From Octopus bimaculoides (Eukaryota), in assembly GCF_001194135.2 (NCBI RefSeq), contig NC_068997.1, positions 50,381,346 to 50,445,345 of the forward strand: a stretch of 64,000 nt of DNA, given 5' to 3'. A program made the translations under genes and the position numbers. The notes under the pieces are model-generated. The model saw only the letters and a list, made by a program, of their open reading frames with translations, was not told the origin of the DNA and made no database searches. Of this stretch, positions 3,921 to 27,849 are shown one piece after another. The stretch's first letter is position 1; every line of letters begins with the position of its first letter.

Positions 3921-4429
3921 TAAGACAATTGCTTCATCTTCTGGGATAGAAAGAAACCAAGAAGACCTGCAAAGATTCCATTCCATTATAAACAGGCTTC
4001 ATAAAGCAATATAATTTACCATGGAGTGTAATAGAAAGGAACTACCATTTCTGGATATCCTTATTAAAGAAGGGGAAAATATCGAAACAGACCTATTTTA
4101 CAAACTGACGGAAACACACCAATACTTAAATTTCTGACGTTGGTTTGTTTACTTCCCCATTTTATAGCCGTTCGAGCGAACTTTTCAAGCCGCTGCTCCA
4201 GTATGGCTGCAGTCCAATGACCGAAACAAGTAACAGTTAATATACTGTACCTCCCGAGCCACAGGAGTGTGGTATGTGAGTCGGGATGAAATGTGCCACT
4301 GATTGCTCTCTGGCATATAACAGCAGCAATGAAGTTCAAACGCCATGTTGGTAAGGATGGGAGCTGTCGTTGGGACGGAGGAAGATGGGAATAGGTTTAT
4401 CAGATCAAATAAGTTGAATCAGATTGGTA

Positions 4430-4720
4430 GGCTGTGTGGTAAGTAGCTTGCTTACCAACCACATGGTTCCGGGTTCAGTCCCACTGCGTGGCACCTTGGG
4501 CAAGTGTCTTCTACTATAGCCTCCGTGTTTGTCTCCCCCCACCATCGCTTGACAACCGATGCTGGTGTGTTTACGTCCCCGTAACTTAGCGGTTCGGCAA
4601 AAAGAGACCGATAGAATAAGTACTAGGCTTACAAAAGAATAAGTCCTGGGGTCGATTTGCTCGACTAAAAGGCAGTGCTCCAGCATGGCCACAGTCAAAT
4701 GACTGAAACAAGTAAAAGAG
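4430..4720 (+). mobile_element. SINE family B with internal deletion
   Basis: Colinear with 33162-33557 except for the missing middle segment. Confidence 0.88.
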
Positions 4721-6281: not shown

Positions 6282-6625
6282 TGGCACTCTGTCAGTTACG
6301 ACAATGAGGGTTCCAGTTGATCCAATCAACGGAATAGCCTGCTCATGAAATTAACGTGCAAGTGGCTGAGCACTCCACAGACACGTGTAGCCTTAATGTA
6401 GTTCTTGGGGAGATTCAGTGTGACAAGGCTGGCCCTTTGAATTACCGGTACAACAGAATCAGGATGAAAGTTGTGGTGAAAAAGTACAGCAGGGGTCACC
6501 ACCCCCCCCTGCTGGAGCCTCGTGGAGCTTTAGGTGTTTTTGCTGAGTAAACACTCACAACACCCAGTCTGAGAATCGAAATCACAATCCTACGACCATG
6601 AGTCTACTGCCCTAACTGCCAGGCC
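6282..6625 (-). mobile_element. SINE family A, internally deleted
   Basis: Reverse-complement similarity to family A. Confidence 0.8.
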
Positions 6626-7503
6626 TTTTCACCTCCTAGATATATATATATATATATATATATATCAAAATAAGCAACAAGGATATCCAAAGTTAATGCA
6701 GTACGATCGTTTCATGCAACTCCATTTATTTAAGCAATGTGAGCATTACATTAAATGTAAAATGCAGAGCAATCCTCAGCTGCAGAAAGATATAGAAATT
6801 TACTGAAATTATATTTAAACAGAAGGACATTTTTATAACTACATTTAAACTCTCCAAGTAGAAAGGAAGAATACAAAAGACCATTTTGACTTAACTAGAC
6901 CATACAGGCTAGTAATTAATTCTAAGCAGATTTTTTACTGTCACTGATTTTCTTTTTTTTTTTTGTTTTTGATTTATGGATCATCTTATCAGACCTAGGG
7001 ATTCAAAGCTTAAGAGGGCACCAGCATTTTATTTATAGGAAAAGGGAAAGGGGTAAACAATACACATGGATGATACGGTTATAAAATTTTTGGGGATTTG
7101 GTGACAAACTACTATAGGTGGGGGGGTTTCTCTACTAGTAGACCAGTTTATAATGGAGCAGGGGAAGTTTTAACATAAGGCACCTAGGTCGAAAGTATAT
7201 AAAATAAAGTTGCTATATTGTGTACAGATATAGTAAATGTTTATTCATAGGTTTCATTAATCAGTATTGTTTTACATATGCTAAATTTGAAATACTTGAG
7301 ATACCAATATTTGCTTAGCGCCTCTAATGATAATGTGAATTATGGGTCTAGTTCATACATGGAAATAGAAAATATTAGTATGCCTGATGCTGTGGGAATG
7401 ATTCTATCTGATAGCACGATGGAAATGGAGTTGGATAGCAACCGAAGCGATCATAAGCAGCCTGATAGTAGAATTAATAATAGCGGAAATAATATCAATG
7501 TGC

Positions 7504-8173
7504 AAAGTTCACCTACTTCGACAGAATCTCATTATTGATGCATCTCAACTGGATTTAAAACAGGGCAACGCGAAAAACAGCAATAATAATAATGATGATA
7601 ATAGCAAAAATGAACAAAAGAAACCCCAAAGCAAAACAAAACCACGCCTGCAGAACAAGAATGCACTTTAGAGACCTTATTCACATCGTGATTAGAAAGG
7701 TGTGTGGAAGCATAGGTTGGAATGCTGCTCTCAACTGGATTTCGTAGTCTCTATTCACACAGCAAAAAAAGAAGGCTAACTTGTTTCTGCTTTCCTTTCT
7801 GTCTTCTACCCAACTCCTTGTAAGGTAAAAGCAGGATCAGCGTTCTGTCAGGAGAACAATTTTCATTCAAACTCTGACCACCAACAACATCAAGAGACTC
7901 TGGCAGATGCCATCAACCATGGTTGTCCTCTTGACTTTCTTTCTTCTCATTCTGGCTTCAGCAGGTAAGACAAAGCTTCTTCTTCTTCTTTATTTAATAA
8001 GTGGTCTTTTGTTGCCCTACTTTCTTTTCCACTAGAAGTTGATTGTTACTTACCAGGTGATTATATAACTTTTCTGCNNNNNNNNNNTTCTGCCAAGCGA
8101 CCAATCGAAAGTGTCCTCATAAGTGGTAAACAAGTCATAAAAATTTGATAACAATTTACTTTGCAAGGGGTCC
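7504..8173 (+). repeat. Local duplication, copy A (paralogous to 10708-11427)
   Basis: Colinear alignment by eye over about 670-720 nt, including the leader exon and the adjacent Dong RT fragment. Confidence 0.9.
7919..7964 (+). CDS. Duplicate signal-peptide (leader) exon A of the Ly6/uPAR gene
   Basis: caaccATGG context; MVVLLTFFLLILASA+G; CAG|gtaaga phase-1 donor; upstream CTAAC (7776-7780), pyrimidine tract and AG at 7823-7824; two substitutions versus 11168-11213. Confidence 0.6.
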
Positions 8174-8745
8174 ATTTCTTATATTCTTCCTGTACCAACT
8201 TGGGGCATTCTGTCACAATGTGTGTGCTACTGTCTCATTCCATCATTCCAAGTTCCACAAGCTCTACATTTTTTCTGGCATATTCTCTCCATATATATTT
8301 TTTCTCAAATTGTTTGTTTTTATCGCTTGGTCTTGGGCTGCTTCAATCAGACTCTGTTTCTTTTTATAATTGTCCCTTTTTTTAACCAAGCCCAGGATTT
8401 TGTTCCACATACGTCTTCAGTGGCTCTCCAAAACTGACCATGCAGAGATTTCTCTTCGTTCTGTCTGACGTGCTCACTTTGTATTCCTTCTTCTCCTTTT
8501 CTCCTATTAGGCTCTTCATCACCTGTTCTTTAACAACCTACACACATTCTTCTACTGCTATTAAGCCTCTTCCACCCTGGTCTCTCCTCAAGTACAACCT
8601 GTTGGTATCAGCTTTCGGATAGTAGGCTCAATGCATCATCAACAACTTGCTAGTTTTTCTGTCAAGTTTCTGGTCGTCTATAATTCCAACTCCATATCTG
8701 ATTAAGGGTACTGCTCTTGAATTTATTACTTCAATGAGATTTTTG
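7985..8745 (-). mobile_element. R4/Dong-clade non-LTR retrotransposon fragments (post-RT/CCHC region joined to RT start)
   Basis: Degenerate NSRAVPLIRYGVGII, KADTNRLYLRRDQGGRGLIAVEEC and a CRACG-type knuckle, joined at gacccc to TCLPLMRTL...TKDHLLNK. Confidence 0.75.
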
Positions 8746-9971
8746 GAATATCATTTTTATTGAGTGAGAGAGCAGTGCATGCCATCAATATGACACCGGA
8801 GTAAAATATACAAAGCCCAGTACACCCATCATCACTACCATATGTGAGTGACATGGTGATCTCATATCAAGATAAGCAGTGCATGACCTTGCAGGTGGGG
8901 CCCTATTGTTATTGTTATTATTATTATTAGCAATATTTTGACTGTCTTTACATTCTGAGTTCAAATTCCACTGAGGTTGACTTTGCCTTTTATCCTTTCA
9001 GGGTCGATTAAATAAGTACCAGTTACACACTAGGGTCAATGTAATCCGTTTAATCCCTTTGCCTGTCCTCTATTTTAGCCCCCTGTGGGCAATAAAGAAA
9101 TAAATTATTATTGTTATTATCATCATTATTATTATTAGAAACAAAAAAAAAAAGAGGAGTGACATTCTTATCAAGTGAAAGATATTTCAACAGGTTCAAA
9201 AAATAAACCTGTCAATCAACTTCATTTTGGTATTATTTATAGAATTGAGGTCACTCCTCCAGAAAGTATAGAAGCAACGGCACTCTTCTTTTTTTTTTTT
9301 TCCCCTTCTATATTTCCTGGAAGAGTAAGCTCAATCCTATAACTATTAACCAAAATTAAGTAGGTTGACAGGTTCATTGTTTTGAACCTGTGGAAGACAC
9401 ACGAAATGTCGAAATATTGTTCACTTGATAACAATGGCACTCTTTTTTTTTTTTTCTTTTTTTGCTTCTATACTTTCTGGAGGAGTAACCTCAATCCTAT
9501 AAATATTATTATTATTATTATTATTGAGGTGTTAGCAATAGAATGGTAGCATTATAGCAGATAATGGTATAAATGGTAGATTACCATAAATTGTACTCCT
9601 GGAAGAGTACTAGACTGTACTCACTAGATAGAATACATGTACTTGACCATCTTCATGCACTTGATAATTCTACTCAGTTTTACAGTGCGTACATATTTCT
9701 CTAATGGTCAGAGGCAGCAATTATTGTGTTAGGCAGTCCGGATCAAACTGACCTGTGACCGGCTACCTCCTAGACACAAACAATGCAGGAAATTCTACCA
9801 AGTTGCTTGATTTATAAGAAATGACAGCCAAATTTACTCTAATTACACCCTACCATTGTTTAACAGTCATCACATAACTAAATGACTGTTGTTTAATCCA
9901 GATCATGTACAGTCTAGCAGAACTATAAAACATTTGAAAAGACCATCCTGTCTTTGATTTTTTCCTCAGCA

Positions 9972-10345
9972 TAGGCGCAGGAGTGGCTGTGTGGCAAGTA
10001 GCTTGCTTACCAACCACATGGTTCTGGGTCCAGTCCCACTGTGTGGTACCTTGGGCAAGTGTCTTCTATAGCCTCGGGCCAACCAAAGCCCTGTGAGTGG
10101 ATTTGGTAGATGGAAACTGAAAGAAGCCCGTTCTATATGTGTGTGTGTGTCTGTGTTTGTCCCCCCAACATCGCTTGATAACCAATGCTGGTGTGTTTAC
10201 ATCCCCGTCACTTAGCGGTTCGGCTAGAGGAACTGATAGAATAAATACCGGGCTTACAAAGAATAAGTCCTGGGGTTGATTTGATTGACTAAAGATGGTG
10301 CTCCAGCATGGCTGCAGTCAAATGACTGAAACAAATAAAAGAATA
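9972..10345 (+). mobile_element. SINE family B
   Basis: Colinear with 33162-33557. Confidence 0.88.
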
Positions 10346-10564
10346 ATGTATCTAGCACTACATTAACCCATCTGTCCTTCCTTTCTTAAAGCAGGAAAGT
10401 GTGGTTTGAGGGATGCTTGACTGCTATTTCAAGCAGAGTCAGCAACCACATAGAAATAGCTTTGTTGGCTCTCTAATTTAATCGTAGTCTTTGTTGTTGT
10501 GGTCAGTTTATTTTGTAGTCTGAGCTGGTGCTTCCAAATCATACAAATGACAAATTGGTCAGAT

Positions 10565-10664
10565 NNNNNNNNNNNNNNNNNNNNNNNNNNNNNNNNNNNN
10601 NNNNNNNNNNNNNNNNNNNNNNNNNNNNNNNNNNNNNNNNNNNNNNNNNNNNNNNNNNNNNNNN
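10565..10664. other. Assembly gap of exactly 100 N (usually means unknown size) inside the Ly6 locus
   Basis: Direct count; other gaps include 25839-26155, 40249-41073, 43986-44279, 52644-53083 and 62202-62461. Confidence 0.95.
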
Positions 10665-10707
10665 TATTTCATTTATTTTATTCGTTTTATGTGAATCATT
10701 TTTCTGA

Positions 10708-11427
10708 AAAGTTCACCTACTTCAACAGAATCTCTTTATTGATTCATCTGAACTGGATTTAAAACAAGGCAACAGGGAAAACAATAATAATAATAATAAT
10801 AGTAATGATAATAGCAAAAATAAATAAAGAAAAACAAAAGAAACCTGAAAGCAAAACAAATCCACGCCTGCAGAACAAGAATGCACTTCAGAGACCTTAT
10901 TCACATGGTGGTCAGACAGGTGTGTGGAAGCACAGGTTGGAATACTGCTCTCAACTGGATTTCTTAGTCTCTATTGACACAGTACTTGTCTGAAATGTAA
11001 ATAAATTTTTTTTAAAAAAGAAGGCTAACTTGTTTCTGCTTTCCTTTCTGTCTTCTTCCCAACTCCTTGTAAGGTAAAAGCAGGATCAGCATTCTGTCAG
11101 GAGAACAATTTTCATTCAAACTCTGACCACCAACAACATCAAGAGACTCTGGCAGGTACCATCAACCATGGTTGTCGTCTTGACTTTCCTTCTTCTCATT
11201 CTGGCTTCAGCAGGTAAGACAAAGCTTCTTCTTCTTCTTCTTCTTTATTTAATAAGTGGTCTTTTGTTGCCCTACTTTGCTTTCTGCATCCTTTCTTTTC
11301 CACTAGAAGTTGATTGTTACTTACCAGGTGGTTATATAACTTTTCTGCCAAGCGACCAATCGAAAGTGTCCTCATAAGTGGTAAACAAGTCACAAAAATT
11401 GATACCAATTTACTTTGTTAGGGGTCC
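10708..11427 (+). repeat. Local duplication, copy B (paralogous to 7504-8173)
   Basis: As for copy A; the shared block ends at ggggtcc in both copies. Confidence 0.9.
11168..11213 (+). CDS. Ly6/uPAR three-finger protein, coding exon 1 (signal peptide, leader B)
   Basis: caaccATGG; MVVVLTFLLLILASA+G; CAG|gtaaga phase-1 donor, in frame with 13668; upstream CTAAC 11025-11029 and AG 11072-11073. Confidence 0.8.
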
Positions 11428-12640
11428 CTGAGACATAACATTGTCCACTTGTCATGAAAGCAGCGACATGACCCTTCTGCAGGCATTCATCCATACGTGT
11501 AGTGATCCTTTTATGCAACTGTGTAAAATTCTTCAGCCAATAACCCTATACTCCACTTGGGCTGGGTTCTTTCCAATTTGCTATATTTTTTTAAACTCCA
11601 GTCTCACTAATTACATAAATTATGACGTCCTTTTTGTCTTGCTACAATTGCAAGTTGTCTCTTCACCTGTCTTGGCCAATTTGCACTTTATGTCTCACTG
11701 GCCTGTTCCAAAAGTTCTCCCTAAAACACTTTACTTTCTTGGGCATCAGGAATCAGTTCCTGACGTTTTCTCCCTTTCTATATCCTCAAAAAAACATCTA
11801 TTTTACAGAAACAATCCATTCCGTTCAAGACCTTTGTATCTAGCATCATATCTTTTCAGTTTGGCCTTTAATGCTGACACCCTTTGTGACAATTCTTCAT
11901 GTACTGTTTGTTTCCCCCTTTCTTCTAACCTGTACTGCCTATTCAATTTTCTGATTATTATCTCATTCTTGAGCTCTCCTCTCATTATCCTATTCAATTG
12001 TCCCAGTTCTTTCTGTGTCTTTTCCAACTTCATTCATATTCTCTTCCTCCAGTTTGGTTCGTTCTTTTCATTCCCCTCCTTTTCTTCAACAGTCTTCCAC
12101 TTGTATTCTATTATTTCAGCTACAATATTAACCACGGTTCCTCTCACTAATATCCACTATTTTAACCAAACTCAAAATGTCATTTATTTTGCTATGGCTC
12201 TCTTTACTTTTCCTCTGTCCTTATATTTGACATTTCATGGTACTTCATTGCTCTCATCACATATTTTACCTTGCAGTATTTCTAGAAACTCCTCTTCACC
12301 ATTTAAGTAATGTGCAACGTTTACTGCCTCTTGTCCAACTAGATCATCTTCTCTCTTCTCTATCTTCATCAACATTCTCAGGCATATAATGATTTCCTTG
12401 TTTTTCATTGTCTTTATCTCTTACCCCTTCATTACTATTTTCTGCCGCTGTTGTTTCACACTCTTCTTGTTCATTTTAATTCTTCTCCGAATTTCACCAA
12501 CCTCTAATCCTGTAATCAAAGCACTTATATGAATTTCCCTTGTTTGGTCAATCAATTGCTGGGAAGAAGCTTCAAAGACGCCCTTTTGATCTCAATATTT
12601 CTTTTCATTCATTACATGAAACCGTTTTTCAATCTTAAAT
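11235..12640 (-). mobile_element. R4/Dong-clade retrotransposon fragment (N-terminal region to start of RT)
   Basis: KLNRQYRLEERGKQTVHEELSQRVSALKAKLKRYDARYKGLERNGLF and TCLPLMRTLSIGRLAEKLYNHL...KGCRKQSRATKDHLLNK; many stops. Confidence 0.8.
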
Positions 12641-12975
12641 CTTGTTTACTTCTCTCCCCTGCTATATTTTTGCTCTTTCTGCACTTTTGACTTGGATTCT
12701 GGTCCTGATCAATGGCTAATGATTAAATCAAGTGGTACACTTGTCATAACTCAATTGAAGTGGTCATTGTATGCCACAGTAAGGAAACACCAAATGGATT
12801 CTTCAAGCCAAGCCAATCAGGAGAACTGACTAGAGGTACATCAAAACTAAGATGTGTGTGTGGAGGGGTAGGCACCATTGCAGCATGTTGTTGGATTTAC
12901 CATTTGTAGGTATATTACCAGGTCCACTTGGGTGACCCATCAAACAGAGTCCTAGTTAGTCCCCCCTCCACGAGA

Positions 12976-13140
12976 TACAAGGGAGTGCTGAAAAGTTTCT
13001 GGATTTGGGTAAAAGAAAATACAGGAGGATCAGTTAATTATGATTTTATTCAACATATCCCACCACCCCCCTCTCAGATTCACACACTTACTGCAGCAGT
13101 CCTTCAGTTTTTCTCAGCCCAGAACTTGGAAGGTTGGGCC
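12976..13140 (+). mobile_element. Mariner-like terminal remnant
   Basis: tacaagggagtgctgaaaagtttctgg resembles mariner TIR starts; no ORF. Confidence 0.5.
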
Positions 13141-13179
13141 TCCAGCTAGGCCTTTCACAATACCCTTAAGGCCAAGAAC

Positions 13180-13520
13180 TTTTCAGCTGCCCCTCATACC
13201 TTCTCCTCCTCCTCTGCCATGACCTTGTGGCATGAGGTCAACCAGCACAAGCCGTCGGCCCAGCTGGAGCCTCAGTGAAGAGAACAAGGTACAGAGGATC
13301 TAACTAAGAAAACCAATCAACATGGCCAAGTAGTCTGAGCTGGTGCTTCCAAATCATACAAATGACAAATTGGTCAGATAATATCCATTAGTCTCGGTTG
13401 GTCATGTTGGGGAATTCGAACAAACTGTAATGACAATTGTTTCTGGTAGGACCCTATGATGAAGGTGCCTGAGGACTTTGTCCCCAGACCCTCCCAGGAA
13501 AAGCAAGCAGAGTAGATGGA
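13180..13520 (-). mobile_element. Degenerate LINE ORF 3' fragment (RTE-like)
   Basis: IWKHQLRLLGHVDW-like motif in a frameshifted reading. Confidence 0.55.
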
Positions 13521-13667
13521 TGGATGGATTACAATCAGATTTTTAATTGTGGACAATCCTTTCGTTAATTCCTTAGCAGTAGTAATAGTAGTAGCGGTTC
13601 CTCAAATCTACTGCTAGTATTTGTGTGTGTGTGCACATTGATTTGTCTATGTCTACCTACTTTACAG

Positions 13668-13808
13668 AATGCCGTCAAATGTGTTATAGCTGCCAATACA
13701 CCATCACCTCAACCAAACAAGGTATAGAGTGTAGCGAGCATTTCAACGAAACATCAAAAATGTACAGATGTTCATTTTCTTGTCTCATAAGAACTTTGAG
13801 AAACACAG
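13668..13808 (+). CDS. Ly6/uPAR three-finger protein, coding exon 2
   Basis: tactttacag| acceptor, CAG|gtaagt donor, phase 1-1; (E)CRQMCYSCQYTITSTKQGIECSEHFNETSKMYRCSFSCLIRTLRNT with the CYSC start typical of LU domains. Confidence 0.88.
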
Positions 13809-15096
13809 GTAAGTAAAAGTGCTTCTCATTCATTTCATCTAATATAATAAATGCGAATGTCAGTGTGTCACACTTTTTCAACTTTACTCCTAGAGGCTGC
13901 AGCTCAACATATCATACCATTTTGGAATCAGGCCAGATTTCCACCTTTTAATGGTATGGAAACTAAGAAGAGAGAAGGAGAGGGAGAAAGCAAGAAAGGA
14001 ATAGATATACTATGGGGAGGAGAGAAAGCTGTAGAGGGAGAAAGAAAAAAAGAGACGGAATGAAATAGAGAGGGTCAGTGTGAGGGGGAGGAAAGAGGGG
14101 AAAATACAAGGTACAGAATAGGAGGAGGATAAGAAGATGACTGAGTGTGGTTGTATGTGTGTATGTCTGTGCGCATGCACGCGTGTGTGTGTGTGTGTGT
14201 GTGCGTGTTAGTTTATGCTTGCATATGTATGTGTCTGTGTTTATATCTGTGTATATGTTTGCATATGTTTGTATGTGTTTCTGTGTGTGTGTGTATATGT
14301 GTGCAATACTTAAGTCTGTCTCCCCCAACAGAGAAAGTGTTTACACTGCACGGTTTGACTCACGATGGCGACCTCCTTATTGATTGAAATCCCATTTCTT
14401 TCTATGGACACAGTTTGGCTAAACATCACCAACTTAGATCATTGTTTAATGACAACAGCCACATTAGGGAAACTCCTTGAGAAGATCAAAGACTTTGATG
14501 TTGAGGATTAGCTTATCCAGGACAATCTGCAAACTGATTTGTCTGTCTATCAGTTATCACCAGGTGTTGACTTAGGAAATTGCTGGAATATGTTGGTGCA
14601 TAGTGTCATAGGAAGGAGAGCTGTCTTTGGTAGCAAATTCCTTTTCTTATGGATTCTATGACAAAGGTGGAAGGGAGGGAGAGGAATACTGGGATTAGGG
14701 GGCAATGAAGGGAGAGGAAGAGGGGGTTGGGGAGAGAAGACAGTGGAAGAGAGGGAAGTGTTCCAGGGAGTGAGTAGTATTGGGAAGAGTGATAGAGAGG
14801 TGGGGGATGGAGGGACACAGGTATTTTGGTGTGAGAGAGTTGCTTTGAGGAGGAGGTGATGGTAAAAGGAGGGTGGAGAGGGGCAGCGTTGGCAAGCAGA
14901 TGGGTGGGGGTGGGGGTGGGAGTAAAGTAAAGAATGTTTGAACTGAACAGTGTTTGATCTGGAGCTTCTATCAGAGCCTAACCCCTCCCACCTCTCCATA
15001 TGTCTTTATTCTCAAGATACCATTGTTTGGTAGCCGAATGTATGCCAGGGTCTATCCCAACTTTCATGATGCTAACCTGTATACATATCAGCATGC

Positions 15097-15217
15097 ATAC
15101 ACAAGACCTCCCACCAGCAACAGCATGTATACAAAAGAGCTCTCATCAGCAACAGTGCATATACACAAGAGCTCCCACCAGTGACAACACATATACACAA
15201 GTGCTCTCACCAACAAA
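15097..15217 (+). repeat. 32-bp minisatellite, about 3.7 units, in Ly6 intron 2
   Basis: Units start at 15101, 15133, 15165 and 15197 (acaagagctcccaccagcaacagcatatatac-like). Confidence 0.8.
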
Positions 15218-15547
15218 AGAGTTATCAGTATATCTATATAGTGTAAATATGTAATGCAAACATGTTTGCAAACCCTGCACTATTTCACATGGGACTTCAG
15301 ATCCTCCAAAGTTATTTTGGTGTACAAGTTGCTCCAGGTTGTTTGAATTTTAATCTCACAAGAGGCACATCTGAACATGCCATTTGTTCTGACGTGTACA
15401 ACCCCCTTAGTCCCTCCACCCTATTTTCTGCTGCTTAATCCCCATCCTCCCTTTTCTTTTTTTTATTCCTTGGCAAAGTAATTAGTGGGACGATTTGATC
15501 TTTTATACTTTCAATGTTTTTTCTTTCTTCCTGTAAAAATATCCTAA

Positions 15548-15814
15548 TACTAGCTGTTGGACCCGGCGTTGCTTGCGTTTTCCATGTTGAAGTTAAGCCC
15601 ACCTCTGATCTTGTACTGAAATCATCTATGTTCCCCGTGCGAAGTGTTACCCATCAATTTTGTTGAAATTTTACATGTGAAAAAATAACATCGTTATGAG
15701 AATTTCCATTCAAACACCCGATTAAGCTCACAAAAATCGATGCCAACTGAGCATTGAATTTTCGAACGATTCACACACACAGACAGACACCATTACACAT
15801 TTATGTATATAGAT
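15548..15814 (+). mobile_element. Helitron-like non-autonomous element in Ly6 intron 2
   Basis: 5' tactagctgttggacccggcgttgc, internal (CA)/(CAGA) tract and 3' tatgtatatagat, the layout of invertebrate Lep1/DINE-type elements. Confidence 0.5.
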
Positions 15815-16077
15815 ATACCTTCACAAGGCTAAGAAAGTATCAATTTGTATGCCAAAAAACATGGCAAACACACAAAACTTATTGCAAACAAGAGTTATAC
15901 ACATTAGCTTTCTCTCTTAATCTTAGACTCTAGCACAAGACTCTTGCACAAGATGCCACACAGTGGCAGCTAAATCTAATAACTACATGGCACTAAAATA
16001 AACTTAACCATGCAGTTATACCTTAATCTTTTGCATAGCCATACCTACACCTAAATATTTTCTTTTCTTTTCTCTAG

Positions 16078-16325
16078 CGACTCAAGAAATAACGTCAGCC
16101 TTCCGTGGCTGCGCTGCACCTGAATCGAGTGGATGTCTTGATATCAACGGTGTGACACGATGTTCTTACACATGCAATAAAGATTTATGCAACACCATGA
16201 GTATTGACAAACTTGAAGAGAAATATGGTTTGAAGAATGGAACAAATGTAATATATGGCAATAATTTCATAATAGTTATTACTTTTCTTATACTGAACTG
16301 TATCAGCCTTCTAAAACTATCTTAG
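16078..16325 (+). CDS. Ly6/uPAR three-finger protein, coding exon 3 (LU C-terminus plus GPI-type signal)
   Basis: ttttcttttctctag| acceptor; (A)TQEITSAFRGCAAPESSGCLDINGVTRCSYTCNKDLCNTMSIDKLEEKYGLKNGTNVIYGNNFIIVITFLILNCISLLKLS-TAG; terminal CN motif and hydrophobic tail; spliced CDS 46+141+248=435 nt, 144 aa. Confidence 0.88.
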
Positions 16326-16328
16326 TTC

Positions 16329-16670
16329 TTAACTCTCGGGTTACCATATTTCTCTTGAATACATTATTATTTTCTAAAAGAATTGAAATAAAGGTAAAGA
16401 TTTAAGTGAAATAACTTTGTTGTTATTAGTCTGGTGTTTGGGACATAACATGAAATTTTCATGGAATCTTTTGAATTTAGGTCCCTCTAACCCATTAGCA
16501 CTTAAACTGGTCCAAATATTCTACTTATGTTCAAACCATCCAGATCTGGCCTCTCACACCTACCCTACAATGTCCTTGTAAGAAATAAACAATCACAACA
16601 TTGAAATCTCAAAACTCCAAGATTACTTAAAAATAATCTGAATGCTAGTGTTAAAAGAAGTTAGTAACCT
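16329..16670 (+). mobile_element. MITE family 2 with nested MITE family 1, starting 3 nt after the Ly6 stop codon
   Basis: TTAA at 16329-16332; similarity to 46619-46742; family 1 inserted at 16487-16654. Confidence 0.7.
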
Positions 16671-16852
16671 AGCAGCAGGACAGTTTCAAGCATGCTGTGG
16701 TCAGAAGGCTTAATAACATGCAAGGACGCTGCTAAATTCACTTTAAATTTATCTCATGAAGTGTCAAAATTTCCATTACACAACTGTGACTTGGTCAGTT
16801 TAGTGACACAGTTTTCGCAGTTCATTATCATTTCATTAATATTTAGCAGAGT

Positions 16853-17232
16853 GGAGGCGCAATGGCCCAGTGGTTAGGGCAGCGGACTCGTGGTCATAGG
16901 ATCGCGGTTTCGATTCCTAGACTGGGCGTTGTGAGTGTTTATTGAGCGAAAACACCTAAAGCTCCACGAGGCTCCGGCAGGAGATGGTGGCGAACCCTGC
17001 TGTACTCTTTCACCACAACTTTCTCTCACTCTTACTTCCTGTTTCTGTTGTGCCTGTAATTCAAAGGGTCAGCCTTGTCACTCTGTGTCACGCTGAATAT
17101 CCCCGAGAACTACGTTAAGGGTACACGTGTCTGTGGAGTGCTCAGCCACTTGCACGTTAATTTCACGAGCAGGCTGTTCTGTTGATCGGATCAACTGGAA
17201 CCCTCAACGTCGTAAGCAACGGAGTGCCAAAA
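16853..17232 (+). mobile_element. tRNA-headed SINE family A, full length with 11-bp TSD
   Basis: A box TGGCCCAGTGG and B-box-like GGTTTCGATTCC; aatatttagca duplicated at 16838-16848 and 17243-17253. Confidence 0.9.
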
Positions 17233-21649: not shown

Positions 21650-22260
21650 TGTAGAGTTCTTTGGGCGGCATCTGTCCGTCTTGTAGAGAGAGAAGTAGAG
21701 GAGGATGTGGAGAAGGAAACTGAAGAGAAACTCCTGAAATGACTGTGAAGTCCATTGTTCAGTCAATTCTATTACACAAAAAGTGGTGCTTCTTCCGTAG
21801 ATGCTACAAGTGTTCTATAAAAAGACATAACTTCCCCGCCTTGTAAACCTCATTCATCTAGGTCTTACAAAGGTTTTTGTCCTCGGCTTAATGCTCATGA
21901 CATTTGTTGTTCCTATAAAGTCCTGTTGTCTGTGATTGCTTCACAAAGAACAGGGGTCAATGTCAATCGCTTTCAAGTCACATTCACACACAACTTCATA
22001 TCACAAGTGCAGGGGCTTTTTGATCTCTCACCACAGATCCCAAGTGATCAACACAGCAGATCTTTTCTGTGAATGACATCTCTTAGCCATGGAGTTTCAT
22101 GCTTGTCCTGTTAAACAAGCTACTGTTTCAGACGTTTTCAAAACAGACAACTCCTATGAAACATACAAAAGCTTATGTTTCCTGCAAAGAACAGGTTTCC
22201 CATCACTTGCTGCCATATTCAAGTGGAAAACCAGGTGTTAAACAACTCGACCGTGCCAGG
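21650..22260 (-). mobile_element. Degenerate RTE-like LINE 3' ORF fragment
   Basis: Remnant PWLRDVI...GLHSHFR resembles the RTE C-terminus; many stops. Confidence 0.5.
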
Positions 22261-22351
22261 TATTCAGCATTGTTTATTCTCCTCTACTAAAGAAGTTTAC
22301 TACATAGCTATAGGCATGGCTCAATAACTGATTAACTATACAATGTATCGT

Positions 22352-22982
22352 GGAGGTACAATGGCCCAGTGGTTAGGGCAGCGGACTTGCAGTCATAGGA
22401 TCGCAGTTTCGATTCCCAGACTGGGCATTGTGAGTGTTTATTGAGCGAAAACACCTAAAGCTCCACAAGGCTCCGGCAGGGGATGGTGGCGAACCCTTCT
22501 GTACTCTTTCATCACAACTTTCTCTCACTCTTACTTCCTGTTTCTGTTGTGCCTGTAATTCAAAGGGTCAGCCTTGTCGCACTGTGTCACGCTGAATATC
22601 CCCGAGAACTACGTTAAGGGTACATGTGTCTGTGGAGTGCTCAGCCACTTGCATGTTAATTTCANNNNNNNNNNGTGAGTGTTTATTGAGCGAAAACACC
22701 TAAAGCTCCACAAGGCTCCGGCAGGGGATGGTGGCGAACCCTTCTGTACTCTTTCATCACAACTTTCTCTCACTCTTACTTCCTGTTTCTGTTGTGCCTG
22801 TAATTCAAAGGGTCAGCCTTGTCGCACTGTGTCACGCTGAATATCCCCGAGAACTACGTTAAGGGTACATGTGTCTGTGGAGTGCTCAGCCACTTGCATG
22901 TTAATTTCACGAGCAGGCTGTTCCGTTGATCGGATCAACTGGAACCCTTGACATCGTAAGCAACGGAGTGCCAACAACAACA
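22352..22982 (+). mobile_element. SINE family A (internal part repeated across a 10-N gap)
   Basis: Same family; about 22431-22664 recurs identically from 22675. Confidence 0.85.
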
Positions 22983-23725
22983 ATTGCTAACAGTGAGTTG
23001 TACAAAAACAACTTATTGAAATGCATTTTAAGTCCAATATAGAGAAAAAGTGTGTAACTTACAATGCCAATAAATTATTTTGTTCTCTACATTAACCACT
23101 TGTTGCTTAAAACTTACAAACTTCATACACTCAGATCCTGGATTGCATTGATACATGCACGCACAGGCATGCATGGTTAGAAAGGAAACTTGTGAAGCAC
23201 ACAGCCATGCCTACAGTGTAATGAAAGTGTTACAATCATATTGAATTTGTGATGGCCAAGAAATTGTAGCAGAACAGTTGAAGCAAAATATAAAAGAGCA
23301 GCTGCAGGCAGACAGACAGCAAAATAGAATAATTCTTAGAGATTTGTCTTAGATTTAGAAAAATATTTATACCAAAAGTTTAAAAAAAAGAAACCACAAA
23401 TAGCATTTTATATTTGACCATCGATGGAAATATTAAGAAAATATTAAAAAAAAAATTTAAAAAAAGATAAAGACAAAATTAATTAAGATATGTTTAATGA
23501 ATGAATAGACAGACAATTAAAGATTGTTTGTATTCCAAACAAAGACATTTTTTTTTAAATATCTTTTTTTTTATTTGAGTTGTTCTTTATTATGAATTGT
23601 ATTTATTACAATATATTTATTTTCAAATTTTTTTTTTTTTTTAATATATATATTTGTTCCAACACTGCCTCAAAGATGGTGTGTAGAGACAGCAGAAACA
23701 CCACACAACTGATTTTATATATTTA

Positions 23726-23791
<66 letters not shown>

Positions 23792-25702
23792 GAGGCAGGG
23801 GAAGGGGGTCACTTCAGAGCCCCCTTTCTCTCATATACACACACACTATTTTATATGTATATATATTTTGTATATGTATATATATAAAACAAGCCGGTAG
23901 AAATAACCACTACTTCAGTTGTGTAGCAAACATTATTAGGAGTTCATTTGCGTCAATGCAAATATTTAGAGTTATCACAGATTTATGACAATGCAGAACT
24001 GAAGTTAATGATTGTGAGAAGAGAAAGAAAAGAGAATAAAAAGAGAGAGAGAGAGTTGGGAAGAAGAGAGGGAGAGAGAAAAAAGAGAAGGAAAGACAAC
24101 ATAATGATTTGGAGCCACTGATTTGGAATTCATCTTTTAGAGAAACCAGAGGAGAGAGAAAAAAACACACACACAAAATAATAATAATAGTATTGGATCT
24201 TGGCACAAGGCCAGTAATTTCAGAAAAAGGGGTTAAATCAATTACATCAACCCCAGTACTCAACTGGTACATATTTTATCGACCCTGAAAGGTTGAAAGG
24301 CAAAGTTGGCCTTGTTGGAATTTGAACTCAGAATGTAAAGACAGACGAAATGCAACTAAGCATTTTGCCCAGCGTGCTAACGATTCTGCCAGCTCGCTGC
24401 CTTAATAATAATAATAATAATAATAATACCAGACAAGATTGGAGGCTTGCATTAAATTCCTTATATTAAATTCCTTACATTAAATATCACAAAGTTTGAA
24501 AATCTTAGAACATAGTAATAATGATTTCAAATTTTTGCCACAAGGGCAGCTTGGCGGAGGGGATTAAGTCAATAACATTGACCCCAGTGTTTCACTGGTA
24601 CTTAATTTATTGACCCTGAAAGGATGAAAGGCAAAGTCGACCTTGGCAGAATTTGAACTCAGAATGTAGCGACGAGCGAAATACTGCAAAGCATTCTGTC
24701 CAGAGTGCTACCGATTCTGCCAGCCTGCCATTTTCAAATGATAATAATTACATTGAGTTGTCATAAATTTGTAACTTTATTCTTCTACAACTTTTGTTTA
24801 TCAGTTTTGAAGTTTGAATAAATTCAATGTCTTTCCAGACATATGACGATAGAATGCCAAGCAGGAAATGAAAGGAACAAATTTATCCAACAGCCCAATT
24901 GTAGTAACTAGCGGTTAAAAAAAAAAAAACTAAGATACAATACAAACAGTAATTAAACAGCACCTCAACTACCCTCTTCTCTTCTCTCCCGACTCCTACA
25001 TTAAATTTGTGAAATGTGATAGATTTTTGCGTTGGTCCCTCTTTGCGGCCTAACTGAGGCAACGTTTTACTAAGTATTATTAGTAGTAAAATTTAGCTTC
25101 AAGATTAAACTTTAGAAATAATAAACTTTCCACAGAGGAGTGGGGTGAGGTGACAATTAGTAATTTATTGGAAAAACAGAATATAACAAAAACTCAACAA
25201 AAACAAAACAAATATTGCTCCCTCACCACCACCACCGCCGCCGCCCTCACTTTATTCCTAAATGCAAGACTATGTTTTATCAGAGAAGTATACAGGATGA
25301 TATCCTATCCCCGTGACATATTACAGCTAATTTTGAATGATCCTAGGATGAACAGCTAATTCAATACTGATTTTGAAATTGGTGTATAATAAAGCAGAGG
25401 GACAACGATGCTAAATATAGTAAATATTGGTGTTTAAACCCAGTGCCCTACAAATCAATATATAAAGTAGAAGGATAATGGGTTAAATATAGATGTTTAA
25501 CCCTTTTAGTCTGTTATATCGCCTGCTATCCTTCTTTATTAGGGAATTAGTTCACAAGAATATATAACCGAGGGAGGAGAGAGAGAGAAAATATATATCC
25601 AGTAGCAGGAGCATTTCCACTATGATGACATCAGCTAGCCAATTACTGTGGACGAGCTTTGCATAACATTTTACAAACTTTTTACCCAAATCTTATTTAA
25701 CT

Positions 25703-25754
<52 letters not shown>

Positions 25755-27131
25755 ATATAATATATGTGTGTTTATACGTATGAGGGGGATGAAACAGCTA
25801 TTGTCTTCTAGAAGACAAAAGATTATGTTTTCTACACANNNNNNNNNNNNNNNNNNNNNNNNNNNNNNNNNNNNNNNNNNNNNNNNNNNNNNNNNNNNNN
25901 NNNNNNNNNNNNNNNNNNNNNNNNNNNNNNNNNNNNNNNNNNNNNNNNNNNNNNNNNNNNNNNNNNNNNNNNNNNNNNNNNNNNNNNNNNNNNNNNNNNN
26001 NNNNNNNNNNNNNNNNNNNNNNNNNNNNNNNNNNNNNNNNNNNNNNNNNNNNNNNNNNNNNNNNNNNNNNNNNNNNNNNNNNNNNNNNNNNNNNNNNNNN
26101 NNNNNNNNNNNNNNNNNNNNNNNNNNNNNNNNNNNNNNNNNNNNNNNNNNNNNNNCTCATGGGGTGGGTGGGGAATAAGTAAACCAATAATTTTAGTTTC
26201 CAAACTTTGAAGTTACTGAGTCAGCACAGGATCAAGAGAGACAGAGATAGTGAGAAGCAGGGGGGGGGGGAGAAAGGAAAGGCTAATATATAATAAAAGA
26301 GGGCGGGGAGAACTTCACCAATGTTGAAGTATATATATATATATATATAAAGCATGTACCATTAATAGAGTGAGCCGGAACAGAGACTAAGTCAAACTAG
26401 TCTGTAGGTGGGAGTACAAGAAACAACGACAAACAGCCAAGTTATTAGGCAAGTTCTTCTCAGTGGAATGAATGAATGACTAAGTCCACCTGAACTTTGA
26501 AGTATTGGTTTTGTGCCTCTTTAACAGATTATTCTAGGTCTAGGTTGGTGTCAGATGAAGACGAGAAGACCAGTAGCAACGAAGAATGTATATACTGGGA
26601 GACAGAGGTAAAGAAAGAGATAGAGACAGACAGACAGACAGACAGAGTGACTACCTTTTGTGTAAATGGGAAAGGAAAACACCTACTCCACCACACCTGT
26701 CCCAGACTCCTAAATCACTGAAAGATGGTAAAGATTCTGAAACAAGCCGACAGCTACATAACGTTTAATGTGGTCCTTGGCTGATGTCTGGCTCAGCAAC
26801 TGAAAAGAAATGTCCTTTTTAGTATCCAAATCATGTTAACAAAAAGAAAGAAAGAAAAAAAAAAGATGAACCATTCCTTCTTATTGTTGTTGGTTTTTTT
26901 TTTTTCGCCGTCAGCAATAATTTTATCATCAAACTGAAAGCTCAATTATTTTGTTTTTTCTTCGACTTCTTTGAAAGTTGGTTTTTTTTTTTTGTTGTTG
27001 TTAAACATACATACATATATATATGTATGTATAGATATTTTATATCATATATTTGTTGCTGTGCAAACAAGTTAAATGATAGCAGACACATCTGAGAGTG
27101 GCAGAGCTGAAGAACTGTTGACTGTTGGTTC

Positions 27132-27217
27132 CTACACAGGACGTCGGATATGGCTAACTTTCATGGTACCTAAACACAAAGCTCGCAGCAAGAAAAGAGC
27201 CGTCAAGATAAACGCCA
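27132..27217 (-). CDS. TMEM55: TMEM55 coding exon 8 (second TM helix and stop)
   Basis: poly-T/cag| acceptor; (V)AFILTALFLLRALCLGTMKVSHIRRPV-TAG with the conserved MKVSH; total CDS 792 nt, 263 aa. Confidence 0.93.
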
Positions 27218-27276
27218 CTGAAAAAAAAAAAAAAAAAAAAATTAAAACAATGTTTGTATTTGTATGTGTGTGTGCA

Positions 27277-27720: not shown

Positions 27721-27810
27721 TTAGAGCTTGGCATTTCTTTATACAGCTGTCCTCATCCAGACACATGTATATATGTACATATGTGTATGCATACATGTAT
27801 NNNNNNNNNN

Positions 27811-27849
<39 letters not shown>

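What the first reader, a model, noticed from the sequence alone, without database searches (positions are those of the whole stretch)
11168..16325. Complete GPI-type Ly6/uPAR three-finger protein gene invisible to the ORF track
Seen: three exons splice in phase (1,1) into a 144-aa protein with a signal peptide and 10 Cys (C21-C100) from CYSC to CSYTCNKDLCN. The usual adjacent CC is replaced by TC. It has two N-glycosylation sequons (N42, N116), a candidate omega site near N116/G117 and a hydrophobic tail. Established: GPI-anchored LU proteins such as vertebrate Lynx1 and Drosophila Sleepless/Quiver modulate nicotinic receptors and Shaker channels, and octopus chemotactile receptors derive from nicotinic receptors. 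Inference (untested): this may be a cephalopod prototoxin-like modulator of nAChR-family or K+ channels. It is the best candidate for an undescribed system here.
Basis: partly seen in the sequence, partly recalled or inferred. Interest (0 to 1): 0.75.

Follow-up and report, generated by a model that had tools for sequence, protein, structure and literature searches.

The report
Octopus GPI-anchored Ly6/uPAR protein gene
This is a real three-exon octopus gene for a small, lipid-anchored, cysteine-rich "three-finger" surface protein; public databases already list it as an uncharacterised UPAR/Ly6-domain protein, and nothing here shows what it binds.

Summary
Exons 11168-11213, 13668-13808 and 16078-16325 (+ strand, GT/AG introns, phases 1 and 1) splice into the 144-aa protein described.

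It is not undescribed. The product is 100% identical to RefSeq XP_014778141.1 (Octopus bimaculoides LOC106874799 isoform X2). UniProt A0A0L8GT88 names it "UPAR/Ly6 domain-containing protein".

- **Conservation:** O. sinensis and O. vulgaris have orthologues (83% identity); the O. sinensis locus, the one examined, has the same exon boundaries. Argonauta has one at 48%. Distant relatives (E 1e-11 to 1e-3) occur in gastropods, bivalves, a chiton, a brachiopod and an annelid. All keep the 10 Cys and the final Asn.
- **Fold:** no Pfam model reaches threshold (best is CD59, 16.5 bits against a cut-off of 33.9). An AlphaFold2 model of the domain (pLDDT 86) matches only three-finger/LU structures in the PDB.
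- **Processing signals:** an N-terminal signal peptide, a conserved N/D-G-T/A omega-like site at residue 116 and a terminal hydrophobic tail fit a GPI anchor.
- **Extra cysteines:** C17 and C137 probably lie in the removed signal peptide and GPI propeptide.
- **Second first exon:** a duplicated upstream exon (7907-7964) encodes isoform X1.

The nAChR/K+-channel "prototoxin" idea is untested and cannot be inferred from the fold. Verdict: an ordinary new member of a known superfamily, of low to moderate interest.

The parts
11168..11213 (+). Coding exon 1b (isoform X2): M1-A15 plus the first base of codon 16. Encodes the signal-peptide h-region MVVVLTFLLLILASA. Donor GTAAGA.
   Evidence: identical to XP_014778141.1
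7907..7964 (+). Alternative, duplicated coding exon 1a (isoform X1, 148 aa): MPSTMVVLLTFFLLILASA plus the first base of the next codon. Donor GTAAGA.
   Evidence: the gene span 7907-16325 is 8419 nt, the same as the called gene in L002
7501..8173 (+). Upstream copy of a tandemly duplicated block holding the promoter-proximal region, exon 1 and the start of intron 1. It is crossed by a 10-N gap at 8078-8087.
   Evidence: 93% identical to the copy at 10705-11427, but 82-83% to the single O. sinensis copy
10705..11427 (+). It lies just after a 100-N gap at 10565-10664.
11214..13667 (+). Intron 1 (phase 1, GT..AG).
   Evidence: collinear with O. sinensis intron 1 at 86-89% identity
13668..13808 (+). 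Coding exon 2: the end of the signal peptide (E16, C17) and the first half of the LU domain, R18-T62. Holds C21, C24, C37, C50, C54 and sequon N42 (13745-13747).
   Evidence: same boundary in O. sinensis
13809..16077 (+). Intron 2 (phase 1, GT..AG). Contains a (TG)n-rich microsatellite at 14138-14305 and a 32-bp tandem repeat at 15097-15216.
16078..16325 (+). Coding exon 3: the second half of the LU domain (C74, C82, C91, C95, C100, N101 at 16191-16193); the stalk; the candidate omega site N116 (16236-16238); the GPI-signal propeptide G117-S144 (16239-16322); stop TAG (16323-16325).
16387..16392 (+). First AATAAA poly(A) signal, starting 62 nt after the last base of the stop codon. A second one starts at 16584.
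   Evidence: pattern match only; usage not shown

Best explanation
This is Octopus bimaculoides gene LOC106874799, a three-coding-exon gene for a small GPI-anchored glycoprotein made of one Ly6/uPAR (LU, three-finger) domain.

**Shown**
- The gene model.
- Its identity to the RefSeq protein.
- Its conservation in octopods and across Lophotrochozoa.
- The 10-Cys plus Asn framework.
- The predicted three-finger fold.

**Inferred mode of action**
1. Exon 1 and the first codons of exon 2 encode a signal peptide. It is most likely cut after C17, because the residue before [R/S]Q[M/K]C is C, G, S or A in the 9 of 15 relatives that carry that motif. ASA|E after A15 is the alternative site.
2. R18-N101 folds into a three-finger domain held by five disulfides. 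By analogy with CD59 these would be C21-C54, C24-C37, C50-C74, C82-C91 and C95-C100.
3. N42 is glycosylated.
4. GPI transamidase cuts at N116 and replaces G117-S144 with a GPI anchor.
5. The mature protein, about 99 residues, sits on the outer leaflet. There it acts as an extracellular protein-binding module, an accessory subunit or ligand for another membrane protein, as all characterised GPI-anchored LU proteins do.

The partner is unknown. My ranking is a neuronal channel or receptor (QVR/Lynx-like) first, an epithelial septate-junction role about equal to it, and other roles well behind.
For: **Gene model and database identity**
- The model splices cleanly.
- It is 100% identical over full length to XP_014778141.1 / UniProt A0A0L8GT88, 'UPAR/Ly6 domain-containing protein'.

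**Conservation**
- O. sinensis and O. vulgaris orthologues are 83% identical. In the O. sinensis locus (the one examined) exon boundaries and splice sites are the same, there are no frameshifts, and dN/dS is 0.44.
- The Argonauta hians orthologue (48% identity) keeps all 10 Cys, the N-x-T sequon, an N-G-A omega-like site and a hydrophobic tail.
- An exhaustive HMMER search found 20 relatives at E<=1e-3. They come from gastropods, bivalves, a chiton, Lingula and Capitella.
- C21, C24, C37, C50, C54, C74, C82, C91, C95, C100 and N101 are invariant in a 25-domain alignment.

**Fold**
- AF2 model of the domain: pLDDT 86.2, pTM 0.72, six beta strands.
- All top-50 Foldseek PDB hits, for both the domain and the full-length model, are three-finger proteins. 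They include ALK5, uPAR, C4.4A, GPIHBP1, TbRII, alpha-neurotoxins, SLURP-2, Lynx1 and TEX101. For the domain model TMq runs from about 0.41 to 0.65.

**Weak sequence hits, all in one fold group**
- CD59 (E 0.007), QVR, UPAR_LY6, Toxin_TOLIP and Toxin_cobra-type.

**Termini and gene structure**
- All 15 full-length relatives examined have an N-terminal hydrophobic region. All have a hydrophobic stretch at or near the extreme C-terminus, and none has a long cytoplasmic tail.
- The three-exon layout is the typical LY6/3FTX gene structure (PMC10421932).
Against: - No Pfam LU-clan model reaches its gathering score: CD59 scores 16.5 bits against 33.9, and PF00021 does not hit the octopus protein at all.
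- Sequence and profile searches of the PDB find nothing.
- hhalign against human CD59 aligns only the C-terminal C..DLCN motif.
- Foldseek E-values are modest; the best are 1.4e-3 and 5.5e-3.
- The vertebrate 'CC' doublet is absent: the spacing is C-x3-C-x4-C-N.
- The signal peptide, the omega site and the disulfide pairing are heuristic. SignalP and GPI predictors were not available, and model coordinates could not be read.
- No transcript or protein evidence was available here.
- Octopus-Octopus intron identity (86-89%) is nearly as high as CDS identity (89.9%), so that comparison alone shows little constraint.
Confidence: 0.85

Rival explanations
1. The protein is a prototoxin-like, cis-acting modulator of Cys-loop receptors (nAChRs or the nAChR-derived octopus chemotactile receptors) and/or Shaker-type K+ channels, like vertebrate Lynx1 or Drosophila QVR/Sleepless. 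This is a special case of the best explanation, not an alternative to it.
For: - It has the same architecture as Lynx1 and QVR: a single LU domain with a GPI signal.
- Lynx1, SLURP-2 and alpha-neurotoxins bound to nAChR are among the structural matches.
- One relative (Batillaria) is auto-named 'Protein quiver' and two relatives give weak QVR Pfam hits, best E 0.055.
- QVR acts on Shaker and nAChR, and chemotactile receptors derive from nAChRs.
- Loop I (QYTITSTKQGIEC) is identical in Octopus, Argonauta and the unidentified sequence P0007, which suggests a conserved binding surface.
Against: - There is no expression or interaction evidence.
- TGF-beta receptor ectodomains, uPAR, C4.4A and GPIHBP1 match the model as well as or better than the toxins and Lynx1, so the fold does not discriminate.
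- The octopus protein itself gives no QVR hit.
- The family is old and spread across Lophotrochozoa, while chemotactile receptors are cephalopod-specific. A dedicated role with those receptors is therefore unlikely to be its ancestral function.
- Ly6 function is not predictable from sequence (PMC3058042).
Confidence: 0.17
2. An epithelial or glial barrier factor. Like Drosophila Boudin, Coiled, Crooked and Crimpled, the protein would be needed to assemble septate junctions, rather than to tune channels.
For: - Four of the few functionally studied invertebrate Ly6 proteins have this role, with the same 10-Cys plus Asn, GPI-type architecture (PMC3058042).
- Septate junctions are the protostome barrier junction, which would fit a family conserved across molluscs, brachiopods and annelids.
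Against: - No detectable sequence relationship to Bou, Cold, Crok or Crim was tested or found here.
- No expression data.
- The argument rests only on how often this role has been found in one other phylum.
Confidence: 0.15
3. A CD59-like protector. The protein would be a GPI-anchored inhibitor of pore-forming (MACPF/complement-like) proteins on the animal's own cells.
For: - The best Pfam hit is CD59 (PF25152): E 0.007, covering profile positions 11-120 of 127. Three of the 19 sequences in alignment A1 hit it.
- The shared C-terminal motif is CxKDLCN.
Against: - The score is about half the gathering threshold.
- hhalign probability against CD59 is 5% and covers only 10 columns.
- CD59 is not among the top 50 structural matches of either model.
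- From general knowledge, a terminal complement pathway with C8/C9 is not established in molluscs.
Confidence: 0.04
4. A secreted three-finger toxin or other soluble factor, for example in posterior salivary gland venom.
For: - The three-finger fold is shared with snake toxins.
- A bivalve relative is auto-named 'U-scoloptoxin(05)-Cw1a-like'.
Against: - The 18-residue hydrophobic C-terminal tail and the omega-like N/D-G-T/A site are conserved in Octopus and Argonauta. The more distant relatives also end in a hydrophobic stretch. Secreted LU proteins lack such a tail.
- This window holds a single copy and no tandem expansion of the gene.
- dN/dS of 0.44 is not the diversifying pattern typical of toxins.
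Confidence: 0.02
5. Not a functional gene: a chance concatenation of ORFs, or a pseudogene.
For: - No transcript evidence could be examined here.
- Intron and exon identity to O. sinensis are similar.
- The assembly around exon 1 is gapped and duplicated.
Against: - The reading frame is intact in four octopod species. Canonical splice sites were confirmed in the two loci examined, O. bimaculoides and O. sinensis.
- All 10 Cys and N101 are kept at 48% identity in Argonauta and across the phylum.
- The start codon context is favourable (A at -3, G at +4) and a poly(A) signal follows the stop.
- NCBI and UniProt models match it exactly.
Confidence: 0.02

Closest known systems
Ly6/uPAR (LU) three-finger domain superfamily (Pfam clan of UPAR_LY6 PF00021, QVR PF17064, CD59 PF25152, Toxin_TOLIP PF00087)
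   Same: - A domain of about 85 residues with 10 Cys in stereotyped order and Asn right after the last Cys.
- A predicted six-stranded three-finger fold that matches uPAR, C4.4A, GPIHBP1, Lynx1, SLURP-2 and alpha-neurotoxins.
- A signal peptide plus a GPI-type tail.
- The typical three-coding-exon gene layout.
   Different: - No Pfam model of the clan reaches threshold.
- The Cys8-Cys9 spacing is C-x3-C instead of the adjacent CC.
- There is a family-specific N-terminus, RQMC[YWL]xCQ[YF], and a near-invariant RGC before Cys6.
Drosophila QVR/Sleepless and the insect Ly6 family (45 genes; Boudin, Coiled, Crooked, Crimpled, Bero)
   Same: - Protostome, single-LU-domain, mostly GPI-anchored proteins defined by 10 Cys plus a C-terminal Asn.
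- Some relatives of the octopus protein carry automatic names pointing this way: 'Protein quiver' and 'U-scoloptoxin(05)-like'.
   Different: - No significant sequence similarity could be shown. QVR Pfam hits occur in only two relatives, at E>=0.055.
- Orthology to any insect Ly6 gene is unestablished.
- Functions in insects range from Shaker/nAChR modulation to septate junction assembly, so resemblance does not transfer a function.
Vertebrate Lynx1/SLURP prototoxins
   Same: The fold and, for Lynx1, the GPI anchoring. Lynx1 (2l03) and SLURP-2 (2n99) appear among the structural matches.
   Different: - No detectable sequence similarity.
- Lynx1 ranks only 50th for the full-length model (TM-score 0.52 on the Lynx1 length) and is absent from the top 50 of the domain model. 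It ranks below uPAR, C4.4A, GPIHBP1 and the TGF-beta receptor ectodomains.
- nAChR binding has not been tested.
Squid Sgp-2 (Williams, Tse & Gagnon 1988, Immunogenetics 27:265, PMID 2894353)
   Same: The title of that paper describes squid glycoproteins with structural similarity to Thy-1 and Ly-6 (citation seen). From my own memory, Sgp-2 is the Ly-6-like one and is an abundant GPI-anchored glycoprotein of squid brain membranes. If so, a cephalopod Ly-6-like surface protein has been known since 1988.
   Different: Whether LOC106874799 is its octopus orthologue or a paralogue is untested.
TGF-beta superfamily receptor ectodomains (ALK5, TbRII, ActRII, BMPR-I)
   Same: ALK5 is the best Foldseek match for both models (6mac_K, E 1.4e-3 and 5.5e-3). 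These ectodomains have the same three-finger fold and a C-terminal Cys-box ending in CN.
   Different: Those receptors have a transmembrane helix and a cytoplasmic kinase. This protein ends one residue after its hydrophobic tail, which runs to L143 of 144.

Membership tests
Ly6/uPAR (LU) three-finger superfamily | 4-6 disulfide pairs in stereotyped positions, with an Asn immediately after the last Cys (definition as in PMC3058042) | tested here: met
   10 Cys (21, 24, 37, 50, 54, 74, 82, 91, 95, 100) plus N101, invariant in 25 aligned domains
Ly6/uPAR (LU) three-finger superfamily | Three-finger beta fold | tested here: met
   AF2 domain model: pLDDT 86.2, pTM 0.72. All top-50 Foldseek PDB matches of two models are three-finger proteins; TMq for the domain model is about 0.41-0.65. 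This is a prediction, not an experimental structure.
Ly6/uPAR (LU) three-finger superfamily | Match to a curated LU-clan HMM above its gathering score | tested here: not met
   Best hit is CD59 PF25152 at 16.5 bits against 33.9. PF00021 does not hit the octopus protein. No member of alignment A1 does better than E 0.0071. Control: human CD59 itself finds no LU protein other than CD59 in the PDB by sequence.
Ly6/uPAR (LU) three-finger superfamily | C-terminal consensus CCxxxxCN with adjacent Cys8-Cys9 (vertebrate hallmark) | tested here: not met
   The sequence is C91-SYT-C95-NKDL-C100-N101. C-x3-C is conserved throughout the family. From memory only: non-adjacent Cys8/Cys9 also occurs in insect Ly6 proteins, so I do not treat this as disqualifying.
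GPI-anchored protein | Cleavable N-terminal signal peptide | tested here: inconclusive
   Hydrophobic h-region V2-A13 (mean Kyte-Doolittle 3.4). An A-S-A site and a small residue before R18 are present, and that small residue is conserved in the 9 of 15 relatives with the [R/S]Q[M/K]C motif. No SignalP run was possible.
GPI-anchored protein | Small omega residue, short polar spacer, then a C-terminal hydrophobic stretch with no cytoplasmic tail | tested here: inconclusive
   N116-G-T (D-G-T in O. sinensis and O. vulgaris, N-G-A in Argonauta), an 8-residue spacer, hydrophobic F126-L143, and the protein ends at S144. All 15 relatives have a hydrophobic stretch at or near the C-terminus. This is heuristic only: no big-PI, NetGPI or PI-PLC test.
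LY6/3FTX gene structure | Three coding exons: signal peptide, then the first half of the domain, then the second half plus the anchor signal | tested here: met
   'Typical 3-exon structure' is stated in PMC10421932.
QVR/Sleepless family (PF17064) | Match to the QVR HMM, or orthology to Drosophila qvr | tested here: not met
   The octopus protein gives no QVR hit at E<=10. Two of the 19 sequences in alignment A1 hit at E>=0.055.
QVR/Sleepless and Lynx1 prototoxins | Physical and functional interaction with Shaker-type K+ channels or nAChR-family receptors | not testable with these tools
   Needs co-expression electrophysiology or co-immunoprecipitation.
CD59 | Match to the CD59 HMM above threshold; inhibition of MAC/pore assembly | tested here: not met
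   16.5 bits against 33.9. hhalign probability is 5% over 10 columns. Function was not testable.
Secreted three-finger toxins | No membrane-anchoring C-terminal domain | tested here: not met
   An 18-residue hydrophobic tail is present and conserved in the octopods; the more distant relatives also end in a hydrophobic stretch.
Squid Sgp-2 orthologue | Sequence orthology to Sgp-2 | not tested

The most novel reading that the evidence does not exclude
The 'RQMC-type' LU proteins form a Lophotrochozoa-wide family that no Pfam model captures. On this reading, the family is the lophotrochozoan counterpart of QVR/Lynx: neuronal or sensory GPI-anchored accessory subunits of Cys-loop receptors. In octopods this gene would additionally tune nAChR-derived chemotactile receptors in the suckers, which would make it the first auxiliary subunit of that sensory system.
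Probability: 0.05. Interest if true: 0.7.

Novelty: new member of a known kind. Interest (0 to 1): 0.2.

Why it matters
As it stands, this is routine annotation. It confirms a public gene model and puts its automatic 'UPAR/Ly6' label on firmer ground through fold prediction, conserved processing signals and a family alignment.

Three modest points of value:
- It defines a conserved lophotrochozoan LU subfamily that current Pfam models miss. The subfamily has an N-terminal RQMCYxCQY, an RGC motif, and C-x3-C-x4-C-N in place of CCxxxxCN.
- It explains the two 'extra' cysteines as parts of the removed signal peptide and GPI propeptide.
- It flags a lineage-specific duplicated first exon and promoter that may give alternative regulation.

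LU proteins are versatile regulators of channels, junctions and receptors. A cephalopod member expressed in brain or suckers would be a reasonable candidate to test with nAChRs or chemotactile receptors, but nothing here raises it above other octopus LU genes.

Tried and rejected
- **Pfam scans.** I scanned the protein and the 19 sequences of alignment A1. Only sub-threshold hits came back, all to models of the LU/three-finger group, so HMM membership cannot be claimed.
- **Sequence and profile searches of the PDB.** Three searches, using the protein, alignment A1 and alignment A2, found nothing. This silence is therefore normal for LU proteins.
- **hhalign of the family profile against CD59.** Only the C..DLCN motif aligned.
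- **Paralogues in the window.** tblastn with relaxed settings found none. The only extra hit was the duplicated exon 1.
- **Word-indexed profile searches.** These were meant to reach named LU proteins and place the family in a subfamily. They returned almost only family members, so subfamily placement stays unresolved.
- **Literature on this gene.** Searches by LOC, XP and UniProt identifiers gave zero papers. I found nothing on Ly6 proteins in cephalopods beyond the 1988 Sgp-2 citation.
- **P0001 contig lookup.** It failed because only the longest isoform is indexed. P0004 worked.
- **Exon-1 duplication as uncollapsed haplotypes.** I considered this. The copies are 93% identical overall and 86% at the 5' end, which seems too divergent for haplotypes. 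However, a 100-N gap lies between them, and a 50-bp exact repeat abuts that gap, so an assembly artefact is not excluded.
- **Disulfide pairing from the model.** This could not be checked because the coordinates are not exposed.
- **tRNA scan of the window.** Negative.

Full report
**1. What is in the sequence**

I read 10800-16700 directly and spliced the proposed exons by script.

| Exon | Coordinates (+) | Splice signals |
|---|---|---|
| 1 | 11168-11213 | donor GTAAGA |
| 2 | 13668-13808 | acceptor TTACAG, donor GTAAGT |
| 3 | 16078-16325 | acceptor CTCTAG, stop TAG |

- The exons total 435 nt, with intron phases 1 and 1.
- The product is 144 aa: MVVVLTFLLLILASAECRQMCYSCQYTITSTKQGIECSEHFNETSKMYRCSFSCLIRTLRNTATQEITSAFRGCAAPESSGCLDINGVTRCSYTCNKDLCNTMSIDKLEEKYGLKNGTNVIYGNNFIIVITFLILNCISLLKLS.
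- The start codon has A at -3 and G at +4.
- AATAAA signals start at 16387 and 16584.
- One correction: the protein has 12 cysteines, not 10. The extra ones are C17 and C137.

**2. It is a known gene model**

- The product is 100% identical over its whole length to XP_014778141.1, 'uncharacterized protein LOC106874799 isoform X2 [Octopus bimaculoides]'. UniProt A0A0L8GT88 names it 'UPAR/Ly6 domain-containing protein'.
- The window lies on CM046617.1 of assembly GCA_001194135.2.
- A 148-aa isoform X1 (XP_052829944.1) begins MPSTMVVLLTFF.... Its first exon is at 7907-7964.
- That exon sits in a block, 7501-8173, that is a tandem duplicate of 10705-11427.
- The two copies are 93% identical to each other. 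Each is only 82-83% identical to the single copy in O. sinensis.
- The duplication is therefore specific to the O. bimaculoides lineage, or it is an assembly artefact. A 100-N gap (10565-10664) lies between the copies, and the 50 bp before that gap are identical to 13330-13379.
- No paper mentions this gene.

**3. Conservation**

- O. sinensis XP_036366174.1 and O. vulgaris CAI9735542.1 are 83% identical to the octopus protein. UniRef names the O. vulgaris protein 'Prostate stem cell antigen-like'.
- The O. sinensis locus has the same three exons, the same boundaries and canonical splice sites. Its introns are 8.8 and 15 kb. dN/dS is 0.44.
- A caveat: introns are 86-89% identical between the two species, against 89.9% for the CDS. 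That comparison alone shows little constraint.
- Stronger evidence comes from Argonauta hians, whose orthologue is 48% identical.
- An exhaustive HMMER search of 1.84 billion representative proteins found 20 relatives at E<=1e-3. They include:
  - gastropods: Babylonia, Biomphalaria, Physella, Candidula, Pomacea, Patella, Nucella, Batillaria, Haliotis;
  - bivalves: Sinanodonta, Mya;
  - a chiton: Liolophura;
  - the brachiopod Lingula;
  - the annelid Capitella, with two domains;
  - a second Argonauta gene, which is a paralogue.
- In a 25-domain alignment the ten cysteines and N101 are invariant. R72 (of the RGC motif) is nearly invariant, and many members start RQMC[YWL]xCQ[YF].
- The window holds no paralogue.

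**4. Is it an LU or three-finger protein?**

- By curated HMMs it is not demonstrably so. The best Pfam hit is CD59 at 16.5 bits, against a cut-off of 33.9. Relatives give only weak hits to QVR, UPAR_LY6, Toxin_TOLIP and Toxin_cobra-type. Models of this LU/three-finger group account for five of the eleven weakly matched families and include the two matched by more than one sequence (CD59, QVR); the other six are single-sequence hits to unrelated models at E 0.018-0.26, which I take to be chance.
- PDB sequence and profile searches find nothing.
- hhalign against human CD59 aligns only the C..DLCN motif.
- A control shows this is expected. CD59 itself retrieves only CD59 from the PDB, so sequence silence between LU families is normal.
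- By fold the answer is clear.
  - AF2 of the full protein gives pLDDT 73.8.
  - AF2 of R18-M103 with the 25-sequence alignment gives pLDDT 86.2 and pTM 0.72, with six strands.
  - For both models, every one of the top 50 Foldseek PDB matches is a three-finger protein. They include ALK5, TbRII, ActRII/BMPR ectodomains, uPAR, C4.4A, GPIHBP1, TEX101, CD177, SLURP-2, Lynx1 and short- and long-chain alpha-neurotoxins.
  - TMq for the domain model runs from about 0.41 to 0.65. E-values are modest, as is usual for small disulfide-rich domains.
- The three-exon layout is the typical LY6/3FTX gene structure (PMC10421932).
- The definition used for insect Ly6 proteins, stereotyped Cys pairs plus a C-terminal Asn, is met (PMC3058042).
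- The vertebrate 'CC' doublet is replaced by C-x3-C throughout the family.

**5. Processing signals (inferred)**

- All 15 full-length relatives examined have an N-terminal hydrophobic region. All have a hydrophobic stretch at or near the extreme C-terminus, and none has a long cytoplasmic tail.
- In the nine relatives that carry the [R/S]Q[M/K]C motif, the residue before it is always small:
  - C in Octopus, Biomphalaria, Liolophura and Batillaria;
  - G in Babylonia, Physella and Patella;
  - S in Argonauta;
  - A in Lingula.
- This fits the -1 position of a signal-peptidase site, so C17 most likely leaves with the signal peptide. The alternative site is ASA|E.
- C137 lies in the C-terminal propeptide and is F in O. 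sinensis and O. vulgaris.
- The mature ectodomain would then have exactly ten Cys. By analogy with CD59 (1-5, 2-3, 4-6, 7-8, 9-10) the pairs would be C21-C54, C24-C37, C50-C74, C82-C91 and C95-C100.
- Residue 116 is N (O. bimaculoides), D (O. sinensis and O. vulgaris) or N (Argonauta), followed by G and then T or A. All are acceptable omega, omega+1 and omega+2 residues. An 8-residue spacer and an 18-residue hydrophobic tail follow.
- The N116 sequon itself is not conserved. The N42 sequon is kept in most relatives at the aligned position, as NWT, NVT, NAS or NGT.
- SignalP and GPI predictors were not available.

**6. How it most likely works**

- It is a GPI-anchored, N-glycosylated, single-LU-domain protein on the outer leaflet. 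It acts by binding another extracellular or membrane protein through its loops.
- Loop I (QYTITSTKQGIEC) is identical in Octopus, Argonauta and the unidentified sequence P0007. This hints at a conserved interaction surface.
- The partner cannot be deduced. The structural neighbours include growth-factor receptors, lipase chaperones, protease receptors and nAChR ligands alike.
The link to this gene is speculation.
- I give about 0.17 to a channel or receptor-modulator role, 0.15 to a septate-junction role, and small probabilities to CD59-like, secreted-toxin and non-gene readings.

**7. Comparison and novelty**

- The gene is a new, unstudied member of a very well known superfamily. Databases already label it as such.
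- From memory, the squid Sgp-2 of Williams et al. 1988 is a cephalopod Ly-6-like GPI-anchored glycoprotein. Only the citation and title were retrieved here. Orthology to it could not be tested.
- What is mildly new is the delineation of a lophotrochozoan LU subfamily that Pfam does not capture, and the lineage-specific duplicated first exon.
- Interest is 0.2.

Noticed in passing
window 7501-8173 and 10705-11427: There is a tandem duplication, about 3.25 kb apart, of the promoter-proximal region, exon 1 and the start of intron 1. The upstream copy has gained an ATG 12 nt further 5' and two substitutions, and it encodes RefSeq isoform X1. O. sinensis has a single copy. The two copies are 93% identical to each other and 82-83% to O. 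sinensis.
   Followed up: yes
window 10515-10664 and 13330-13379; also 8078-8087: The 50 bp just before the 100-N gap (10565-10664) are 100% identical to 13330-13379. Both match the same O. sinensis site just upstream of exon 2. Proximal and distal parts of the O. sinensis intron 1 are split between the two O. bimaculoides copies. This may be a scaffolding artefact rather than a real duplication.
   Followed up: partly
window 15097-15216; L001 about 21900-32900: A 32-bp tandem repeat (3.8 copies, consensus ATACACAAGAGCTCCCACCAGCAACAGCACAT) lies in intron 2. In the orthologous O. sinensis intron it has expanded into a satellite-like array of about 11 kb. This accounts for most of the size difference in that intron.
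   Followed up: partly
window 35810-36094 (- strand): An ORF containing ...[30 protein letters not shown]... matches Pfam Tmemb_55A (PF09788) at E 2.4e-21. It is an exon of a neighbouring TMEM55/PIP4P-type phosphoinositide phosphatase gene on the opposite strand.
   Followed up: partly
window 6282-6616 and 16873-17229: An inverted repeat pair of about 350 bp (83% identity) flanks the whole LU gene. It is probably two copies of an interspersed repeat in opposite orientation. Related copies also occur in the O. sinensis locus.
   Followed up: no
window 4405-4698(-), 33154-33429(-), 40035-40250(+), 47382-47741(-), 63348-63659(-): There are many copies of an interspersed repeat whose translation reads ...SRRHLPKVPRSGTEPGTMWLVSKLLTTQ... 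It looks like a SINE. ARAGORN finds no intact tRNA anywhere in the window.
   Followed up: no
window 14138-14305: A degenerate (TG)n/(TGTA)n microsatellite lies in intron 2. Similar (CA/TG)n and (TA)n tracts abut several assembly gaps, for example at 25839, 27801, 40249 and 52644.
   Followed up: no
L002 1-454 (about 9.5 kb upstream of the gene, outside the window): The upstream neighbour on the chromosome is a gene for a Peptidase_M24 (PF00557) protein of 434 aa.
   Followed up: no
L003-L006 (Logan contigs from runs ERR12921336-41 and SRR9969973): Protein P0007 carries an exon-2-like stretch, GRQMCYNCQYTITSTKQGIECASEYNDT..., with loop I identical to Octopus. After it the reading frame runs on, apparently into an intron. 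It is probably an orthologue from another cephalopod, but the organism could not be identified here.
   Followed up: partly
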